A stretch of DNA of 9,278 nt from positions 1-9,278 of the forward strand of contig NW_003314612.1 in the NCBI RefSeq assembly GCF_000143415.4, in the 5' to 3' direction. Position 1 is the stretch's first letter. Each line of letters opens with the position of its first letter. The notes below the pieces were generated by a model. The model was given only the letters and a program-made list of their open reading frames with translations. It searched no databases and was not told where the DNA came from. The translations under genes and the position numbers were made by a program. Below, piece after piece: positions 1 to 9,278 of the stretch. This stretch comes from Selaginella moellendorffii (Eukaryota; Plantae; Lycopodiophyta).

Positions 1-310
1 TGATGTCATACAGTGACAAGATCCTGGCATGACACCCATTCCACTACATAGCGATGTAAAAAAACTCGAGCTTCGATACTACTCGGCTGCGCAATGAAAA
101 ACATTCTTCGAAGATTTACGCGTGCTACAATACCACAGTGACATGATCTGACCAGTTTGTGCGAGAAGATCGAGTTTGGTTTGGATACCAACGTGTGCCT
201 GCTGGTCGTAAAGCTTTGACTCGTAGAGGCGTAGCACCACCTCTTTAAGTTAAAAGATGTTTGGGGCCGAGCGAGCGAGCGAGCACATTTCTATCATCCA
301 TCCGTCCACC

Positions 311-2263
311 ATGGGCATGCCGGACGAAAATCAGGTTTGCGATAAAGAGGGAGCTCTCAAACAGTCTCTTTGTTTCTTGTTCTCTCATAGATTGTTTCTG
401 TTCCAGATGGAGGAGGTGCTCGTGGATGCTCACGATAGGGTGCGAGTAATGACCCTCAATCGCCCTCGAGTGCTCAACTCTCTCAATCTCTCCGTTGTAA
501 GAGTTTGCATTTGGATCAAGAAGCCTTTGCGGCATCCTGGTTTTTGTTCTTGAGCTTTCTCTTTCAGGTCTCCCGACTCGCGGAGCTGTTTGAGCAGTGG
601 GAGAGAGATGAGAGTGTGGAGCTTATAATCATCAAGGTGAGCTCCACCTACCATTCTTCTCTTTTTTAATCCCTGTCTCGCAGGCCGCAGGCAAGGTTTT
701 CTCTGCTGGTGGTGACCTGCGCATGTTCTACGATCACAGGAAAGGTTTTGTTCAAGGATTAAGCTTTGGTGATTTTGATTCCCTTGCGTGTCTTTCCCAG
801 ACGAATCGTGGAAGGAAGTCGTGTACAAAAAGTACTGGCTCGACTATCACCTGTACAGCTACAGGAAAACAAGAGTATGTTCACATCACCTTTCTCAAAG
901 CCTAGAAGACTTGGAACTTAGAGACTTTTGTTCTTCACAGGTAGCTATTTGGCACGGACTCGTTGTGGGAGGGGGAGCAGGCTTTACGTTTCCCAGCACG
1001 TTTAGAATCGTCACTGAGAATGCTGTACGTTTTGTGATTGCTATTTGAGAGTATCTAACAGTTTCGCTGCCAGGCATTCTCCACTCCCGAAGTTGCTGTC
1101 GGTTTTCATACTGATTGTAGTGCCTCGTATTTCCTTCCACGACTTCCAGGACATCTGGGTAAAAATCACTCTTTGAGATTTCTTACTTGATCTCAAATTT
1201 AAGTTTTTCAGGAGAATACCTTGCGCTCACAGGCTCGAAACTGGACAGCGCTGATATGCTAGCTTGTGGCATCGCTACGCATTTTGTCCCTTCAAAGGTG
1301 GTTTTCCGTTTTCTGATCTCTTCTTACATTTCAATCAAACTATTGCAGGATGTTCCGGAGCTTGAGAAGACTTTGCTGAATTTACAACCGGAAAGCTCAA
1401 TACAGGAGGCTATCCAGGGATTTGCTAAGACGCCTGAAGCTGGAGCGAGCAGTGTCATGAAAAGGCAAAACTTCTTAATCGTTCAAAGTTTACGTATGAA
1501 CTAACAAGCTTCCAGGCTTTTCCAGGATGACTTGGATAAACAGCTGCTTCTCGAAAGACCGAGTTGAAGAGATAATCGAGTCTCTGGTGAGTCCCTGAGG
1601 CCTTTGCGTTGATTTCTTTCTTGATAAATCCCGCTTGTCAACCGTTTCACTAGGCCAGTACCAATGACGAATGGTGTAAAGAAACTGCACGGTCACTGAG
1701 GCGCCTCTCGCCAATTGCGCTCAAGCAAGCCTTAGCATCGGTTAGAAGAAACTCTCTCGCGCGCGCGCGTACGCAATTTTTGTGCTGATTGTGTTTGGAA
1801 TTGTCAACACAGATCCGGCAAGGCAGGACTCAGAGCTTGAAGAAATGCTTGGAAAGAGAGCAGCGGATTACTCTAAATTGCTTAAGGAGCCTAGTCTCGG
1901 ATGATCTCTACGAAGTAAGTTCTTCGGTTTCCTGGTTCCATAAAAGTTCTTTCTGCTTCTTTCTGATTATGACTAGGGGATTAGAGCTGTGGTTGTGGAT
2001 AAAGATCGCGCTCCAAAGGTTGGTTGTGTTGGCTCTCAAACGTTAAGGTTCAGCCATGTTAATTGGTGAAACTTTTGCAGTGGAATCCATCGACTCTTGC
2101 CGAAGTCACGGATGACATGGTAGAGTTGATCTTGAACACCTACACTGCCAGGGAGCAAATTCAATTGCCTCTGGAAGACGAGGAAAGGTAAACTAACTAA
2201 AATCCCTTTCGTCATCCCTTCAAACCCTTCAATTCAAGGTGGAGTGGCAAATACTCGGCCTAG
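311..2263 (+). CDS. 3-hydroxyisobutyryl-CoA hydrolase-like protein (enoyl-CoA hydratase/crotonase family; resembles the plant HIBCH-like 5 / At1g06550 type), 15 exons, 370 aa
   Basis: Exons 311-334, 407-496, 568-636, 684-744, 801-874, 941-1024, 1074-1158, 1212-1297, 1349-1464, 1526-1586, 1654-1740, 1813-1914, 1977-2018, 2081-2187 and 2239-2263 join in frame (1113 nt) from an ATG in CCACCATGG context to TAG. 13 introns are GT-AG and one is GC-AG, all 47-72 nt. Family motifs: MTLNRPRVLNSL, FSAGGDL, GLVVGGGAG, TPEVAVGFHTD (catalytic Glu/Asp positions), RLPGHLGEYLALTG, GIATHFVPS, CFSKDRVEEIIESL, DLYEGIRAVVVDKDRAPKWNP, C-terminal RWSGKY. The subfamily call is from recalled motifs. Confidence 0.95.
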
Positions 2264-2337: not shown

Positions 2338-2579
2338 TAGGGTTTTTGCGAGAAGGGGAAGAAACTCTCGGGGACGCGGAACCAGAACCACTTCGATGGG
2401 AGACCAGTACGCATCTCGGCAGTGATCTCCGAGTGGTGGCGGATGTCACTAGCGGCAATTCGTCTTCAGAGTTTGGATGGGTGGTGATCTTCCGCCTAAG
2501 AGCAGAACATGAGTATGACTCGAAGCAGGGTAGAGTTTTTTATTCGCTTACCATTCGCATTCCAAAGAGCGCGATTTAG
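2338..2579 (+). pseudogene. Collapsed relic of gene X (copy X0): N-terminal fragment fused to the last strand of an alpha-crystallin domain
   Basis: 2469-2498 encodes EFGWVVIFRL, versus EFLWMVMLRL in copies X1 and X3. 2516-2570 (DSKQGRVF..LTIRIPKS) aligns at DNA level with 8001-8052 and 6471-6510. A TAGGGTTT motif at 2338-2345 precedes it, as upstream of X3. Confidence 0.65.
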
Positions 2580-3114: not shown

Positions 3115-3860
3115 TCGTTGTGGATTTACGTTTCCCCGCACGTTTAGAATCGTCACCGAGAATGTTATAAGTTTTGTGGTTGCTACTTGAGAGCATCTAA
3201 GAGTCCGAAGTTGCCGTTGGTTTTCATACCGATTGTAGTGCCTCGTATTTCCTCATACCTTGCGCTCACGGGCTCGAGGCTGGCCTATACGGTAGCTTGT
3301 GGCATCGAGCGACGCATTTTGTCCCTTTAAAGGTGGTTTTCCGTTCTCTTATTTCTTCGTACATTTCAATCAAACTATTGCAGGATGTTCCGGAGCTTGA
3401 GAAGACGTTGGTGAATTTCCATGAATACAGGAGGCTATCCTAAGATGCCAGAGGCTGGAGAGAGCATTGTCATGAAAAAGTAAGCTTTTATGGGACTCTA
3501 TGTATGAACTAACAAGCTTCTATGCTTTTCCAGGATTACTGCTTCTCGAAGGACCGCGTTGAAGAGATAATCGAGTCTCTGGTGAGCCTTTGCGTTGATT
3601 TCTTTCTTGTCAACTAGGCCAGTACCAATGAAGAATGGTGTAAAGAAACTGCTCGGTCACTGAGGCACCTCTCGCCACTTGCGCTCAAGCAAACCGGTTA
3701 GTGAAAACTGCGCGTTACGCATAACATTTATGCTGATTTTGTTTGGAATTGCCCACACAGATTCGGCGAGGCATGATGGAGAGCTTGAAGAAATGCTGCG
3801 GATTACTCTAGGAGCCTAGTCTGTTTCTGTGTAGGGAATTAGGCTGTGGTTATGAATAAG
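3115..3860 (+). pseudogene. Unprocessed partial pseudogene of the hydrolase gene (exons 6-13)
   Basis: Colinear with ~960-2003 including intron sequence (e.g. intron 8, acatttcaatcaaactattgcag). It lacks the 5' exons, has the intron 6 donor changed GT>AT, and carries multiple deletions (e.g. ~80 nt spanning intron 7) that break the frame. Confidence 0.93.
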
Positions 3861-3974: not shown

Positions 3975-4735
3975 ATGTTAAAGCGCTTCATCCACAAAGC
4001 AAATGCGAGTAGGAGTAGGAGCAACAGCAGCAAAGGCAAGAAACTCTCTCAGGTGAGAAAAACACTGACAGACAAGGCTGGAGAGTTTCTGTGGATGGTG
4101 ATGCTCCGCCTAAACAACCGTGTCCGCGGCCAAGTCTTTAGGGCGCTAGGCGGCAGTGGGTGGGCCACCGACGCCTTCCAGTCGCATGTCCTGCATCACA
4201 ACCAGCGGCGAATTCCCCCCTGTTGAACAACCACTCGGGCTTGACGACTGCGGCGACTTGTTTCCATCCATGGTCAAAGGATGCAATTCGCCGCTTGCAT
4301 GGAAAGCCACCCCTACATCACCGTACACAGGAAGAAACTTGCCTCATGCACAACTTTTGCCGGAGTGTTGCCTGCTGAGCCGAGAAAGAACTCTTCTCTG
4401 GGGAGCCAAACGTGCACGAGTTGCAGGAGCAAGCGCGTGTGTTTGCCGCTAAAGACCTCTGGTATCTGCAGTCCACGAGTCTCTCTAACCTGGTCTATGA
4501 GTTTTCTCCATCATATGCTTCATCGGTTGTTCCAAAAGCTCTCCTCTCCAGCGATCATTTGAAATTGATGAGGTGTGCCAGGAGCCTCGGGTTGGCGCAG
4601 GAGGTGGCTGCTGCTGGGGGGCTGCCAGAGTTCTCTCAGCACGGAGGCCTTGTTTCTCTCTACAACTTCGAGAAGAAACACGCTTGCCACCTCAAGCACA
4701 ATAAAGGTATGACTTTGATCTGCCTGAGTGCTTGA
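3975..4735 (+). pseudogene. Gene X copy X1, frameshifted exon 1 only
   Basis: Starts MLKRFIHKANAS and is homologous to 6627-7400. The homologous peptide is split across ORFs 3915, 4156, 4160 and 4412 (e.g. a 20-nt deletion near 4200). It ends shortly after the conserved donor aataaag|gtatg at 4707, and the first alpha-crystallin exons are absent. Confidence 0.92.
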
Positions 4736-4823
4736 TTTCCCTCTTGTGATGTCTTCAAACCCTTCCCGTTCTTTAATTGGTTCTTTTAGGAATATATACA
4801 CATCCTGTGTAAGATCTTTCAGC

Positions 4824-4986
4824 CTCAGGTGAGCAAACCCAAGAAGACCTGTCGCGATAGAACGTGATTGTGGACTGTGCAGGGCCGGAACTCATCATTA
4901 AGAGCAGTGACGTCTTCAAGCAAAGGAAGTTTAACCTTCCTTCTAGTGCTGACTTAGAGCGTTTTTCAGTGAACAGCTTGCTTACC
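4824..4986 (+). pseudogene. Collapsed relic of gene X (copy X1b): 5' motif joined to the second alpha-crystallin-domain exon
   Basis: 4824-4839 (ctcaggtgagcaaacc) is identical to 5455-5470. 4849-4986 reads LSR*NVIVDCAGPELIIKSSDVFKQRKFNLPSSADL and aligns with 6367-6510 and 7914-8040. Confidence 0.75.
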
Positions 4987-5417: not shown

Positions 5418-6512
5418 AGTAGGAGTAGGAGCGGCAGCAAAGCCAAGAAGCTCTCTCAGGTGAGCAAACCACCAACGGACGATGCCTAACAATATGGAGA
5501 GTTTGTGATGCTCGCTTCCAGGGGCATCTCCTGGATCACCGAAATCATGAGCGGCGAATTCCCTGGGAAACCACTCGGGTTTGACGACATAGGCGACTAC
5601 GGTTGCCCGTATCCAGACATGATCAGGAAGAAACTCGCCTCGTGCACGACTTTTGCCGGAGTGCTGCCTGCCGAGCCGAGAAGGAAGTCTTCTCCAAACG
5701 TGCACGAGTTGCAGGAGCACACTCTTACCAACTGCTGCTAAACTGCCACAAGCTCGTTGATAAAGGTATGGCTTTGATTCTCCCTGGAGTTTTTTATTTC
5801 TTTTTCTCTGTGGCTTGCAGGATATGACGAGCGCAAGCTATTTTGGTCGTTCTTAGAGAACCAGCAGTTCTACACTGTTGACGTGCAAGTGCCCGGTAAG
5901 TAATGATTTACAGGTGTTATTATCTTATTTCTTTTTCCTTGTGTGCGACAGGTCTCACATCGCTGGATCAACTGCGTGTTGCGAAAGATGGAAAGGGTGT
6001 GCGTGTTTCCATGGAGAAGGACGTGTCCTGGCACAAGAAGCTTGCCATTCCTCCTTACGCTGATGTCGATGGTGCAATAGTTAATCTCCAAGATGAGATT
6101 CTCACCATTTGCTTTCCCAAGGGGGACCCTGTGCCCAAAGAGACAGTTCTGACAATTGACCAAAGAGACAGTGCCAATTGAGGACCTCGACGAGGCCGAG
6201 CTAAACAAGGGTATTGATATTATATTTGTAGCCAAGAACAAACGTCTCAAGGCAACTATTGAAGATGACAAGGATTACCACATTTTTCATGTCGAAGTTC
6301 CAGGTATGCCCCTTGAAACTTTCTAGTTTTCTCAAGAGCTGTTGGTTTGTTTGCGACCGTGTAGGCTTGTCGCGAGAGAAAATATAGTGGGTGCAGGGAA
6401 CGAACTCATCGTTAAAAGCAACGCCAACGTCTTCAAGCAAAGGAAGATTAAGCTTCCCTCTAGTGCCGAGATGAAGCAGACTAGAGCTTTCTTCAGAAAC
6501 GGTTTGCTTGCA
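5418..6512 (+). pseudogene. Gene X copy X2: deleted exon 1, intact first alpha-crystallin exons, frameshifted second alpha-crystallin domain
   Basis: Exon 1 homologue 5418-5765 has several large deletions relative to X3. Exon 5821-5895 and the exon starting at 5952 keep their splice sites and encode YTVDVQVPG|LTSLDQ..EILTICFPK. 6180-6303, intron 6304-6364 and 6365-6512 encode a second, frameshifted domain. Confidence 0.9.
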
Positions 6513-6560
6513 TGCAATGGAAATATGATAGCGCCTTCTTATTTCTTATGGAGTCAGGGC

Positions 6561-6576
6561 TAGGGTTTTAGGGTTT
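6561..6576. promoter_or_regulatory. Two tandem telo-box motifs (TAGGGTTT = reverse complement of AAACCCTA)
   Basis: TAGGGTTT at 6561-6568 and 6569-6576, about 50 nt upstream of the X3 ATG. Telo-boxes are established plant promoter/5'UTR elements. Function here is inferred. Confidence 0.45.
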
Positions 6577-6626
6577 TGGAGGAATTCAATTGAGCCGGGC
6601 GTATTCACTCTGCCAAAAACTAAAAA

Positions 6627-7788
6627 ATGCTAAGGCGCTTCATCCACACGGGCAGCAAAGGCTCTCAGGTGAGCAAACTGACGGACAAGGCCTACAAAGA
6701 GTATGGAGAGTTTCTGTGGATGGTGATGCTCCGTCTAGAGAACCGTGTCCTCGGCCAAGTCTGTAGGGCGCTCAACGACTGTGATGCTACCACCGGCTGC
6801 TTCGAGTCGCATCTCTTGCGTCACACGCTTGAGTACAACGAAATCGTGAGCGGCAAATTCCCACCCGTTGAAAAACCACTCGGGTTTGACGACAACGGCG
6901 ACTACCCCTGCCCGTATCCACGCATGATCAAGCTTGTGGACGATGCCTGGGAGGATAACTTCCGCCGCTTCTGTAAAGAGGAACCCATACATCACCGCAC
7001 ACAGGAAGAAACTCGCCTCGTGTACGACTTCTGTAGGAGTGCTGCCTGCCGAGCTGAGAAGGAAGTCTTCTCCGGGGAGCCAAACGTGCACGAGTTGCAG
7101 GAGCAGGCGCGTGTGTTTGCTGCTGATTGTTATCCCAAGCTCCTTGGTCTGCAGTCCACGAACCTCTCCAATCTGATCGAAGAAGTTTCATATACTGTCA
7201 TTCCAGAGGCTTCCTTCTCCAGCAATGACTTGAGGAGGTGTGCCAAAAGCCTCGAGTTGGCACAGGCAGTGGCTGATGCCGGGGGGCTGCCGCAGTTCTC
7301 TCAGCACGAAGGTCTCGTCGCTCTCTACAACTTTGAGAAGAAACACGCATACCAGCTACTGCTAAACTGCTGCAAGCACAATAAAGGTATGGTTCTAATC
7401 ATGCCTGGAGTTTTATTTTCCTTTTTTCTCTGTGGCTAGCAGGATATGACGAGCGGAAGCTCTTGTGGTCGTCCTTCGAGAACCAGCAATTCTACACTGT
7501 CGATGTGCAAGTGCCCGGTAAAGTCATTTGCAGATGTTGTTATTTATTTCTTTTTCTTCCTATCGCACAGGTCTCACTTCACTGGATCAAGTGCGTGTTG
7601 AAACAGATGGACAGAACGTGCGTGTTTCCACGAAGAAAAATGTGTTCCGCCCCAAGAAATTTGTAATTCCTTCTTATGCTGATGTGGAGGGTGCAATAGT
7701 TAATTTCCAGGATGAGATTCTCACCATTCGCCTTCCCAAGGGGGATGCTGTGCTCAAAGAGACACTTCCGACAATGTTGCTGAGTTGA
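6627..7788 (+). CDS. Gene X copy X3: uncharacterised protein with a C-terminal HSP20/alpha-crystallin-like domain, 3 exons, 350 aa
   Basis: Exons 6627-7386, 7443-7517 and 7571-7788 (1053 nt) join in frame through GT-AG phase-1 introns of 56 and 53 nt, both conserved in X2. The C-terminal SFENQQFYTVDVQVPGL..VRVETDGQNVRVS..FVIPSYADVEGAIVNFQDEILTIRLPK fits the alpha-crystallin pattern. It may be a truncated allele of a longer gene. Confidence 0.78.
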
Positions 7789-8052
7789 ACTGATATCATC
7801 ATTAGTCAAGAATAAATTTTTCAAGGCAACTAATGACAAGCATTACCATATTCTTTATGTGGACGTTCTATGTCCTGTGAAACTTTCACGCATTTTCTCA
7901 AAACCTTTTGCTTTAGAGAAAGTAATTGTGGGTTGTGAAGGGCCAGAACCCATCGTTATGACCAGCACCAGCAAAGGAAGCTCAAGATTTCTTCTAGTGT
8001 TGACTTGAAGGATGCTAGAGCCTTTTTCGGGAATGGCTTGCATTCCAAGAGC
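7789..8052 (+). pseudogene. Degenerate second alpha-crystallin domain downstream of the X3 stop
   Basis: Aligns with 6200-6510: KNKFFKATNDKHYHILYVDV, donor lost (gttc[cagg]tatg), then EKVIVGCEGPEPIV..RKLKISSSVDLKDARAFFGNGL. Confidence 0.8.
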
Positions 8053-8059
8053 TCAATGG

Positions 8060-8186
8060 AGTTATATCCTTCCTTGTCAATGAACATTTTGTTGCAAGTC
8101 TCGGTTGCAGAAGTCTCGATAGTTCCAAACATACCCTCTACATACATAATTAGCAAATCTAGAGGAATAAAAAAGCTTTAGACAAG
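8060..8186 (-). pseudogene. Relic of gene Y downstream of X3
   Basis: Minus strand LSKA..IMYVEGMFGTIETS. ctttagacaag at 8176-8186 is identical to 2719-2729, and 8118-8135 matches 2666-2683 at 15/18. Confidence 0.45.
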
Positions 8187-8359
8187 AGTTAAGCTGGGAG
8201 TTCGAATGGAATATTTTACTACTTGCTGTCTTGAGCATAATCTATTGAGCTGAATTCAGTTCATGCCACCTTGTGAATAACTGCCATTTTTTTTTCTTTA
8301 ATAGAAATAATAGCGTGGTTACACATTGTGGTGTGATGAATGCAGAACCTGCAGAACCT

Positions 8360-8377
8360 TGTGTGTGTATATATATA

Positions 8378-8409
<32 letters not shown>

Positions 8410-8448
8410 GTTTTCTTGTGTATGTGTGTGTGTGTGCATGTGTATGTA
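8360..8448. repeat. Compound (TG)n/(TA)n microsatellite
   Basis: Alternating TG and TA dinucleotide runs are directly visible. Confidence 0.95.
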
Positions 8449-8449
8449 A

Positions 8450-9278
8450 TGTATTATGATTAATCTTGTGTATATAAATTATAAAATGTTTATAATTATA
8501 AACTTCATTAGATCTATTGGTAAATAATAAACACTACTATTAAGCAAACCAAACATTGTTATATGCAACATGTAGCAAATTATTGTAGTGTTTATAAACA
8601 TACTTTTTACTTAGGGGAGGAGAATGGCAAAGGATCAAATATGTTTTAGAGAGATTGTATTTCTGAAACATAAATTTTCCTAATATTTTGTTTTCATCTT
8701 TCCAAATTTTAAGATAATTTTCTTTTATCTTAGCAAAAAGGGACAGTTTGAGCCATCTCCATATCCTAGGAGTTCTTAAACTGATTCATCATTAGAGTTT
8801 AGTTTTTCATTTTTCTCCCTTGGAAAGTACATTAGAGACATAGCAAGGTTACATAACAATTGAATAGTGCATTGATGATGTTGACTAGTATAACTTTTCT
8901 TCTAGCCTGCTTTGTAAATTTGGCCTTACTAGAGTCAATTGACATTGATAAACAGGTGATCAATAGTCACAAATCTAAGTAGCAACATGAAAATTATCAA
9001 TGGGTTTCAGATGGAATATGTTCAACTACATTGCTGATAATTAATTTAAAATAGTTTTTATTATTATAATCTTAAAAAAAGCTTTTTGATATTATAAATA
9101 TTTTAATTTTTTTAGGTGGGACAGTTTTGAAAAGATTCATAGAATACTTGGACCTCTTTATGAGGTATGTATTATTAGAATATTTCTACTAAATTTTATA
9201 CTGAGCTTCTATCATAAAACCTTTTAGCGTTTTAATATTTACTTATAACCCACTTCTATAAATAATATTTTAGAAGTT
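8450..9278 (+). mobile_element. AT-rich block, possibly a degenerate intron-containing DNA transposon
   Basis: Abrupt compositional shift to AT-rich sequence. 9116-9164 is a clean exon (ttttag|...|gtatgt) reading WDSFEKIHRILGPLYE, reminiscent of the hAT transposase W..L..L.P.YE helix. No termini or target-site duplication seen. Confidence 0.25.

What the first reader, a model, noticed from the sequence alone, without database searches (positions are those of the whole stretch)
6180..8052. Hidden second alpha-crystallin domain: gene X was a tandem double-ACD protein
Seen: downstream of the first domain in X2, an open frame reads IEDLDEAELNKGIDIIFVAKNKRLKATIEDDKDYHIFHVEVPG. It is followed by a 61-nt GT-AG phase-1 intron (6304-6364) at the same VPG| position as in domain 1, then GLSREKI..GAGNELIVKSNANVFKQRKIKLPSSAEMKQTRAFFRNGLL. 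Homologous pieces lie at 4849-4986, 7789-8052 and 2516-2570, and the last supplies the terminal LTIRIPK. Established: E....Y.....VPGL..E and F.NG.L.I.IPK are HSP20/alpha-crystallin signatures. Inference: the ancestral gene was [unknown ~250 aa]-ACD1-ACD2, formed by internal duplication of a two-exon module. No single ORF shows this, and each copy carries different lesions in ACD2.
Basis: partly seen in the sequence, partly recalled or inferred. Interest (0 to 1): 0.75.

Follow-up and report, generated by a model that had tools for sequence, protein, structure and literature searches.

The report
Decayed double alpha-crystallin gene copies

Summary
The window is a whole 9278-bp scaffold of Selaginella moellendorffii. 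Gene X3 (6627-7788) is the annotated 350-aa SELMODRAFT_432472.

Four paralogues of 420-524 aa elsewhere in the genome carry the intact layout: N-terminal region, ACD1, linker, ACD2. Pfam HSP20 scores their ACD2 above threshold (E 4e-10 to 1e-7). ACD1 is the divergent domain (E about 0.09).

ACD1 and ACD2 profiles align without gaps (hhalign 97.5%, E 6e-12). Both are split by a phase-1 intron in the Gly codon of VPG|L. This supports an internal duplication.

In X2 a net 16-nt insertion (6155-6170) is what puts ACD2 out of frame. In X3 a roughly 19-nt linker deletion creates the stop.

The 253-aa N-terminal region has no credible relative outside Selaginella among 1.84 billion representative proteins.

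Two corrections. The architecture is hidden only on this scaffold. The window's exon pieces do not reach Pfam on their own.

Tandem-ACD proteins are known in animals. This is a lineage-specific plant variant seen here mostly as pseudogenes, so interest is modest.

The parts
6627..7788 (+). Gene X3, the annotated SELMODRAFT_432472 (350 aa). Exons are 6627-7386, 7443-7517 and 7571-7788, with two phase-1 introns. It encodes the N-terminal region plus ACD1 only. The stop is at 7786-7788.
   Evidence: P0001 is 100% identical and its longest contig is 9278 bp. Splice sites were read. tblastn of P0002 covers residues 1-364 here.
7789..8052 (+). X3 relic of the linker and ACD2, badly decayed. It has a roughly 19-nt linker deletion that shifts the frame into the stop, and a 4-nt deletion that removes the splice donor. 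A 22-nt deletion spans the acceptor, followed by a 10-nt deletion and an 11-12-nt deletion in the last strand. The terminal ..IPKS-like end is retained at about 8041-8052.
   Evidence: DNA alignment A2. tblastn pieces 7808-7966 (frame 2) and 7969-8040 (frame 1), E 9e-8. Three-frame reading.
5424..5760 (+). X2 remains of the N-terminal exon. Large internal deletions of about 72 and 238 nt relative to X3. The start codon appears to be lost.
   Evidence: Self-blastn blocks 5537-5625, 5624-5719 and 5719-6156 against X3. tblastn frames. Reading.
5821..6154 (+). X2 ACD1: exon 5821-5895, phase-1 intron 5896-5951, exon from 5952. The reading frame is still open.
   Evidence: Translation. 81.5% DNA identity to X3 over 5719-6156. 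dN/dS against X3 is 0.35.
6155..6170 (+). X2 lesion: a net 16-nt insertion, part of an imperfect 25-nt tandem repeat at 6135-6181. It shifts the frame by +1 between ACD1 and ACD2 and leads to the stop at 6179-6181.
   Evidence: TRF period 25, 2.0 copies, score 62. Frame check with the 16 nt skipped.
6171..6303 (+). X2 linker plus ACD2 exon A (VPIEDLDEAEL ... DYHIFHVEVPG).
   Evidence: E 2e-23 against P0003.
6304..6364 (+). X2 ACD2 intron: 61 nt, GT-AG, phase 1, in the Gly codon of VPG|L. Same position and phase as the ACD1 intron.
   Evidence: Read. The paralogue proteins read EVPGLSREE across it.
6365..6515 (+). X2 ACD2 exon B. It reads LSRE, then a 1-nt frame slip and a stop (TAG 6383-6385), then ..AGNELIVKSNANVFKQRKIKLPSSAEMKQTRAFFRNGLL. 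The last strand (LTIxIPK) is not recognisable.
   Evidence: Three-frame reading. tblastn. Pfam HSP20 E 0.12 on this piece alone.
3975..4745 (+). X1 N-terminal exon with two frameshifts. ACD1, the linker and ACD2 exon A are missing downstream.
   Evidence: tblastn of P0002 changes frame 3 to 1 to 2 and finds no match to residues 282-401. 70% DNA identity to X3.
4849..4986 (+). X1 relic of ACD2 exon B. It has an in-frame stop (LSR*NV) and 3-nt and 9-nt deletions, and it departs from the family after LLT.
   Evidence: tblastn E 1e-11, 64% identity to P0003. 79% DNA identity to X2 6368-6469.
2448..2579 (+). X0, an internally deleted copy just after the upstream gene. A fragment of the N-terminal region (EFGWVVIFRL) is joined to the end of ACD2 (..LTIRIPKSAI, then a stop).
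   Evidence: ORF 2244-2579. tblastn E 0.045. Alignment A2.

Best explanation
The window is a birth-and-death array of one Selaginella-specific gene family.

The ancestral gene encoded four parts in one chain:
- a basic, Ser/Thr-rich leader
- a region of about 250 aa, predicted helical, with no known relatives
- a divergent alpha-crystallin domain (ACD1)
- an acidic linker, then a canonical but short HSP20-type domain (ACD2).

ACD1 and ACD2 most likely arose by tandem duplication of a two-exon module, since both keep a phase-1 intron in VPG|L.

Segmental duplication placed four copies here, and each lost ACD2 in a different way:
- X0 and X1 by large internal deletions
- X2 by a 16-nt slippage insertion in the linker, plus a 1-nt slip and decay of the last strand
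- X3 by a roughly 19-nt linker deletion that creates the present stop, followed by loss of both splice sites and further deletions.

X0, X1 and X2 are dead. X3 keeps 350 open codons and has probably lived on as a truncated protein with the N-terminal region and ACD1 only.

For the intact proteins the inferred mechanism is an ATP-independent holdase or scaffold. The two beta-sandwich domains of one chain would pair with each other, as the two ACDs of Tsp36 do, instead of relying on the beta6-loop swap of ordinary plant sHSPs.

Shown: the anatomy, the homology and the lesions. Inferred: the chaperone function, the domain pairing and organellar targeting.
For: Source and gene model. P0001 is 100% identical and its contig is 9278 bp.

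Intact paralogues with both domains. Pfam HSP20 on ACD2 scores 32-40 bits against a cut-off of 20.8. PDB sHSP sequence matches to ACD2.

ACD1 homologous to ACD2: hhalign 97.5%, E 6e-12. Cross tblastn hits of ACD2 on ACD1 reach E 1e-8.

Fold: the models are low-confidence, yet their Foldseek hits are dominated by sHSPs.
- P0002: top hit is Tsp36 (2bol), E 3e-7. Ribosomal protein chains are interleaved among the sHSP hits.
- P0007, which has ACD1 only: nearly every hit with E <= 0.001 is an sHSP. 4rzk gives TM 0.72 and rmsd 2.4 A.

Lesions. Copy map.

Constraint on ACD1: dN/dS 0.35 at dS 0.38 between X2 and X3. X3 has no frame-breaking change in 1053 nt, against at least 5 disabling events in the 264 nt that follow.

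Lineage restriction of the N-terminal region.

Leader composition: 4-8 R+K, 0-1 D+E, and no hydrophobic core.
Against: - Both structure models are poor (mean pLDDT 37.6 and 48.4), so the fold matches are only supportive.
- ACD1 alone does not pass Pfam (E 0.09).
- The window's own ACD2 pieces do not pass Pfam on their own.
Their intron positions and dN/dS are unknown, and their models may be predictions without transcript proof.
- No expression data exist for X3.
- No tree shows ACD1 and ACD2 as sisters relative to other Selaginella ACDs.
- The C-terminal I-x-I motif of sHSPs is not conserved.
Confidence: 0.85

Rival explanations
1. The ACD2 pieces are remains of a separate single-domain sHSP gene that sat downstream of each X copy. 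The two-domain paralogue models would then be annotation fusions.
For: The paralogue proteins are computer-predicted models (names). In X2 and X3 a stop does separate ACD1 from ACD2.
Against: In X2 the two frames differ only by a 16-nt insertion inside one uninterrupted stretch. The restored frame reads the family's conserved linker TVPIEDxDEAEL. The linker has no start codon, promoter gap or intron. Four independent models and one partial model (P0006) read through the same linker.
Confidence: 0.04
2. ACD1 and ACD2 came together by fusion of two different ACD genes, or by capture of a pre-existing double-ACD cassette (for example from the secretory double-ACD family noted elsewhere in this genome). 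They did not duplicate inside this gene.
For: At 32% identity the two domains are old. Another Selaginella family with two ACDs is on record in this scan (not checked here).
Against: The intron position and phase are the same. The alignment is gap-free over 68 columns. Both domains share the shortening relative to HSP21 and Hsp16.9. ACD1 is far closer to ACD2 (E 6e-12) than to the general HSP20 profile (E 0.09). Extra partial modules in P0010 and P0011 show that the module does duplicate in place. Capture of an already duplicated cassette is not excluded.
Confidence: 0.12
3. X3 is also a dead gene. Its long open frame is a survival by chance, or the annotation of a pseudogene.
For: It sits in an array of three dead copies on a tiny scaffold. 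It has lost a whole domain. No expression evidence was available.
Against: There are 350 codons without a frameshift or stop and with intact GT-AG introns, directly next to 264 nt carrying at least 5 disabling deletions. dN/dS is 0.35 on ACD1. Other family members also end after ACD1 (P0007, P0008, P0012).
Confidence: 0.3

Closest known systems
Tsp36 of Taenia saginata (PDB 2BOL), with other animal multi-ACD sHSPs such as schistosome p40, earthworm double-ACD sHSPs and shrimp multi-ACD genes (PMC2850924, PMC13226371)
   Same: Two alpha-crystallin domains in one polypeptide joined by a linker. 2bol is the best Foldseek match of the low-confidence P0002 model.
   Different: It is an animal protein and almost certainly an independent duplication. 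It has no 250-aa N-terminal region. The Selaginella ACDs are shorter, about 70-80 aa. Sequence identity is 17-19%.
Plant organellar and cytosolic sHSPs: Arabidopsis HSP21 (7BZW), HSP25.3 (5NMS), wheat Hsp16.9 (1GME), pea HSP18.1 (5DS2)
   Same: ACD2 aligns to their ACD from beta3 to beta9, including the ...A.(F/L).NG(L/V)LTI..PK end. The leader is basic, Ser/Thr-rich and transit-peptide-like.
   Different: They have one ACD and a short N-terminal arm. They carry a beta5-beta7 stretch 12-14 residues longer, including the beta6 loop used for dimerisation, and a conserved C-terminal I-x-I motif. Neither of those two features is conserved here.
Plant non-chaperone 'ACD proteins' such as Arabidopsis IDM2/ROS5, IDM3, ACD15/ACD21 and RTM2 (from my own knowledge, not tested here)
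   Same: An ACD combined with unrelated extra regions. The ACD may serve as an assembly or scaffold module rather than a classical heat-shock holdase.
   Different: No sequence relationship was shown. Those proteins have a single ACD.
Secretory double-ACD family of Selaginella moellendorffii noted in this scan (s1-394692, s1-398874, s1-368830)
   Same: Same genome, with two ACDs in one chain.
   Different: Those proteins are described with a signal peptide and no long N-terminal region. The family here has a basic leader without a hydrophobic core and a 250-aa orphan region. They were not retrieved by either word search, so the relationship is untested.

Membership tests
HSP20 / alpha-crystallin domain (Pfam PF00011) | ACD2: sequence match to the family profile above the curated cut-off | tested here: met
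   Intact paralogues: P0002 37.8 bits, P0003 38.1, P0004 37.2, P0005 32.1, P0010 32.1, P0011 40.2, against a cut-off of 20.8. The window's own relic reaches only 13 bits, E 0.12.
HSP20 / alpha-crystallin domain (Pfam PF00011) | ACD1: sequence match to the family profile | tested here: inconclusive
   Pfam gives E 0.09, about 13 bits, on P0007 and P0008, covering profile positions 6-91. That is below the cut-off. Homology to ACD2 is strong (hhalign 97.5%, E 6e-12). UniRef names the ACD1-only proteins P0001 and P0008 'SHSP domain-containing'.
HSP20 / alpha-crystallin domain (Pfam PF00011) | Seven- to eight-stranded beta-sandwich fold | tested here: inconclusive
   The models have mean pLDDT 37.6 and 48.4, rising to 50-63 in the ACD regions. 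The strand pattern fits. Foldseek hits are dominated by sHSP ACDs, with 4rzk at TM 0.72 and rmsd 2.4-2.5 A for both models. Confidence is too low to count as proof.
HSP20 / alpha-crystallin domain (Pfam PF00011) | Conserved beta8-beta9 motif A-x-x-x-N-G-V/L-L-x-I-x-x-P-K | tested here: met
   ACD2 reads A(S/F)(F/L)(R/Q)NGLLTI(R/H)(V/I)PK in the paralogues, and AFFRNGLL in X2. ACD1 keeps only ..(D)EILTIRLPK, without the N-G.
Classical oligomeric sHSP chaperones | C-terminal I/V-x-I/V anchoring motif and the beta6 dimerisation loop | tested here: not met
   The tails differ: AIELTSE in P0002, STELQS in P0003, STTAVV in P0010. Only P0002 has an I-x-L. Alignments to HSP21 and HSP25.3 need a 12-14-residue gap where beta6 lies.
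Classical oligomeric sHSP chaperones | Holdase activity, large oligomers, stress induction | not testable with these tools
   No expression or biochemical data are available.
Tandem-ACD (multi-ACD) sHSP-like proteins | Two ACDs in one open reading frame | tested here: met
   Met in P0002, P0003, P0010 and P0011. Within the window it is met only as relics, and no copy is intact.

The most novel reading that the evidence does not exclude
Selaginella has evolved its own family of possibly organelle-targeted tandem-ACD proteins, built on an orphan 250-aa helical region. In this family the linker-plus-ACD module is repeatedly gained (partial third modules in P0010 and P0011) and lost (X3, P0007, P0008, P0012). 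X3 would be a living, selectively maintained product of domain loss rather than a pseudogene. That would give a natural series of one-, two- and three-module variants for asking what a second ACD does.
Probability: 0.35. Interest if true: 0.45.

Novelty: new variant of a known kind. Interest (0 to 1): 0.33.

Why it matters
Small heat-shock proteins normally carry one alpha-crystallin domain and build their dimers between chains. Natural proteins with two domains in one chain are few and are described mainly from animals. I found no paper on this family or on tandem ACDs in Selaginella.

A plant family with two shortened ACDs behind a lineage-specific N-terminal region would be useful material for studying how ACD dimers can be hard-wired, and what an sHSP does without the beta6 loop and the I-x-I motif. 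The family also offers natural truncation and extension variants.

For annotation there are two points. The public entries mark at most one sHSP domain. The 350-aa model on this scaffold is a truncated derivative.

The window itself adds only a tidy example of gene birth and death.

Tried and rejected
- **Pfam on the window's exon pieces by reference.** No piece reached HSP20. This does not count against the finding, because the pieces are 24-75 aa halves of a short domain.
- **N-terminal region.**
  - Pfam found nothing.
  - ESM Atlas gave no usable hit.
  - phmmer against 1.84 billion representatives returned only family members plus P0009. P0009 is a 2023-aa Bacteroidota Ig/PKD/T9SS repeat protein whose eight short repeated matches I reject as repeat-inflated noise.
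- **AlphaFold2 of P0002 and P0007 with 8-row alignments.** Confidence was low, so the models are used only as weak support. Ribosomal protein chains among the Foldseek hits of the P0002 model are set aside as two-domain look-alikes of a poor model.
- **Word searches for ACD relatives outside the family.** Only family members came back.
- **Rfam on the window.** Nothing.
- **Earlier-findings look-ups by place and by sequence.** Blank.
- **Steps not done.**
  - Inside scripts only, codons of ACD1 exons 2 and 3 were pooled to count substitutions.
  - Also in a script, the X2 frame was checked with the 16 nt skipped and the break marked.
Full report
**Source and layout**

The window is a complete 9278-bp scaffold of the lycophyte Selaginella moellendorffii. 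The ORF at 6627-7439 retrieves the 350-aa protein SELMODRAFT_432472 (P0001) at 100% identity, and that protein's only contig is 9278 bp long. I do not take the contig for human.

Reading, ORF listing and self-comparison give this map on the + strand:

- An intron-rich enoyl-CoA hydratase/isomerase-type gene at about 300-2262. One exon alone hits Pfam ECH_2 at E 2.8e-9.
- A remnant X0 at 2244-2579.
- A 76%-identical pseudo-copy of the ECH gene at 3122-3797.
- Three further copies of gene X:

| Copy | Coordinates |
|---|---|
| X1 | 3975-4986 |
| X2 | about 5424-6515 |
| X3 | 6627-8052 |

- An AT-rich tail at 8060-9278.

The copies are 70-87% identical in DNA, so the duplications are old.

**Checking the observation**

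- In X2 the ORF 6156-6326 reads the stated peptide ending ...HIFHVEVPG.
- A 61-nt GT-AG intron at 6304-6364 splits the Gly codon after its first base.
- Exon B then reads LSRE.., followed after a 1-nt slip by ..AGNELIVKSNANVFKQRKIKLPSSAEMKQTRAFFRNGLL.
- The ACD1 introns of X3 (7518-7570) and X2 (5896-5951) split VPG|L in the same phase. The X3 splice is verified by the annotated protein.
- tblastn with an intact paralogue finds the homologous pieces at 4849-4986 (E 1e-11), 6159-6509 (E 2e-23), 7808-8040 (E 9e-8) and 2448-2570 (E 0.045).
- A four-way DNA alignment agrees.

**What it is**

The word search and a second search restricted to the ACD region found only S. moellendorffii proteins. Four of them are intact and read N-terminal region, ACD1, acidic linker (..TVPIEDxDEAEL..), ACD2, ending ..NGLLTIxxPKS. 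They are P0002 (465 aa), P0003 (420 aa), P0010 (519 aa) and P0011 (524 aa).

*ACD2.* Pfam HSP20 hits the second domain of all of them, and of P0004 and P0005, at 32-40 bits against a cut-off of 20.8. PDB sequence searches align the same domain to Sulfolobus Hsp20.1, Arabidopsis HSP21/HSP25.3, pea HSP18.1 and wheat Hsp16.9. So the 'hidden' domain is the canonical one.

*ACD1.* The first domain, the only one left in the annotated X3, is the divergent one.

- Pfam gives only E 0.09.
- A profile of ACD1 aligns to a profile of ACD2 with 97.5% probability, E 6e-12 and 32% identity, over 68 columns without a gap.
- ACD2 queries cross-hit the ACD1 exons of X3 at E 1e-8.
- UniRef names the ACD1-only proteins 'SHSP domain-containing'.

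*Structure models.* The alignments are shallow and the models poor: mean pLDDT 37.6 for P0002 and 48.4 for P0007. Their Foldseek matches are nonetheless dominated by sHSPs.

- For P0002 the top hit is the two-ACD protein Tsp36 (2bol, E 3e-7). Ribosomal protein chains are interleaved with the sHSP hits.
- For P0007, which has ACD1 only, nearly all hits are sHSPs. 4rzk gives TM 0.72 and rmsd 2.4 A.

I treat this as supportive only.

**One gene or two**

In X2 the ACD1 exon continues directly into the linker and ACD2 exon A. The only obstacle is an imperfect 25-nt tandem repeat at 6135-6181 (TRF). Compared with the family it amounts to a net 16-nt insertion at 6155-6170.

With those 16 nt skipped, the two parts are in one frame and read ..KETVLT|VPIEDLDEAEL... 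That is the paralogues' linker.

**Lesions, copy by copy**

- **X0** keeps a 5' region and a fragment of the N-terminal region, joined directly to the end of ACD2 (..LTIRIPKSAI, then a stop).
- **X1** has two frameshifts in exon 1. It lacks ACD1, the linker and ACD2 exon A. Its exon B relic has an in-frame TAG, 3-nt and 9-nt deletions, and a diverged end.
- **X2** has apparently lost its start codon and about 310 nt of exon 1. It keeps ACD1 open. It then carries the 16-nt insertion, a 1-nt slip after LSRE with a TAG, and an unrecognisable last strand.
- **X3** is intact through ACD1. A roughly 19-nt deletion in the linker then shifts the frame into TGA at 7786-7788. Downstream, the donor is lost to a 4-nt deletion and the acceptor to a 22-nt deletion. 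There are also a 10-nt deletion, an in-frame 6-nt deletion, and an 11-12-nt deletion in the last strand.

**Is X3 alive?**

X3 has 1053 coding nucleotides without a frame-breaking change and with intact splice sites. These lie directly beside 264 nt carrying at least five disabling deletions. ACD1 of X2 against X3 gives dN/dS 0.35 at dS 0.38. Codons of exons 2 and 3 were pooled inside the script for counting only.

Other family members also end after ACD1 (P0007, P0008, P0012). I infer that X3 functioned, and may still function, as a truncated protein with the N-terminal region and ACD1. The probability is about 0.6-0.7. No expression data could be consulted.

**Origin of the double domain**

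Internal duplication of a two-exon module is supported by four points.

- The intron position and phase are the same in both domains.
- The ACD1-ACD2 alignment is gap-free.
- Both domains share the shortening of the beta5-beta7 stretch. Alignments to HSP21 and HSP25.3 need a 12-14-residue gap there.
- The module is still duplicating. P0010 has an extra partial linker plus ACD start. The tails of P0011 and P0008 (..ITTFxVSKFQ..) are the +1-frame reading of a further exon A, matching ORF 6259-6387 of the window.

It is not proven. No tree with outgroup ACDs was made. A second double-ACD family, with a signal peptide, is on record for this genome and could not be compared.

**The N-terminal region**

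- It has no Pfam family and no usable Atlas hit.
- Among 1.84 billion representative proteins it matches only family members. The one other hit is a spurious match to a Bacteroidota Ig/PKD repeat protein.
- It is predicted helical, at low confidence, and has seven cysteines in P0002.
- The first 17-40 residues are rich in Arg/Lys and Ser/Thr/Ala, nearly free of acidic residues, and lack a hydrophobic core.

That composition fits an organellar transit peptide better than a signal peptide. This is inference only.

**How it probably works**

By homology the intact proteins are ATP-independent holdase- or scaffold-type ACD proteins. They lack the beta6 loop and a conserved C-terminal I-x-I motif. 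The two ACDs of one chain plausibly pair with each other, as in Tsp36, and the orphan N-terminal region would provide client or partner specificity. None of this is tested. The copies in this window do not make such a protein.

**Comparison and novelty**

Multi-ACD sHSPs are documented in Taenia (Tsp36; PMC2850924) and in earthworm and shrimp (PMC13226371). Three literature searches found nothing on this family or on tandem ACDs in Selaginella.

The proteins are already in public databases as uncharacterised 'SHSP domain-containing' entries with one recognised domain. I rate this a new variant of a known kind. The window holds its wreckage.

**Limits**

- The joined spliced models and a consensus of the ACD2 pieces were deliberately not built for any search or fold.

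Noticed in passing
window 300-2262 and 3122-3797: The upstream gene is an intron-rich enoyl-CoA hydratase/isomerase (ECH_2, hydroxyisobutyryl-CoA hydrolase-like). One exon gives E 2.8e-9. A 76%-identical, exon-and-intron pseudo-copy lies at 3122-3797. The original duplicated unit was therefore ECH plus X.
   Followed up: partly
window 2338, 3949, 6561, 6569 (+ strand): TAGGGTT occurs four times, each within about 25-65 nt upstream of the start of an X copy (X0, X1, and twice before X3). It is the plant telomere-repeat or 'telo-box' type motif. 0.82 matches are expected by chance, and 1 of 200 shuffles reaches 4. It is possibly a conserved promoter element of the family.
   Followed up: partly
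window 8060-9278: An AT-rich tail (GC 30-33% against 42-55% elsewhere) with a compound (TG)n/(TA)n microsatellite at 8360-8447. It has no long ORF and no Rfam match. Its nature is unknown.
   Followed up: no
window 4821-4850: Just before the X1 relic of ACD2 exon B there is a 16-nt exact copy (ctcaggtgagcaaacc) of the 5' end of exon 1 (compare 5453-5470, 'LSQVSKP'). The X1 exon B relic may therefore belong to a further, internally deleted copy built like X0 (5' end joined to the ACD2 tail).
   Followed up: no
P0011 residues about 475-524, P0008 residues about 140-191, and window ORF 6259-6387: The C-terminal tails of two annotated paralogues (..ITTFxVSKFQACRKRL..) are out-of-frame readings of another linker-plus-ACD module. 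The same peptide appears as the +1 frame of X2 exon A. P0011 thus carries the relic of a third ACD module, and P0008 a frameshifted second one.
   Followed up: partly
P0010 residues about 365-420: An extra partial repeat of the linker and the start of ACD2 (..VEDFDETKLDKTKNKVDDEHHHEVP.. followed by ..IEDLDETKLDKTKNKPIKATSVDDEHHHILRVEIPG..). This shows ongoing tandem duplication of the module.
   Followed up: no
P0004, P0005: These two annotated models skip the C-terminal half of ACD1 and the linker, and parts of the N-terminal region. They are either further decayed copies or mis-spliced predictions.
   Followed up: no
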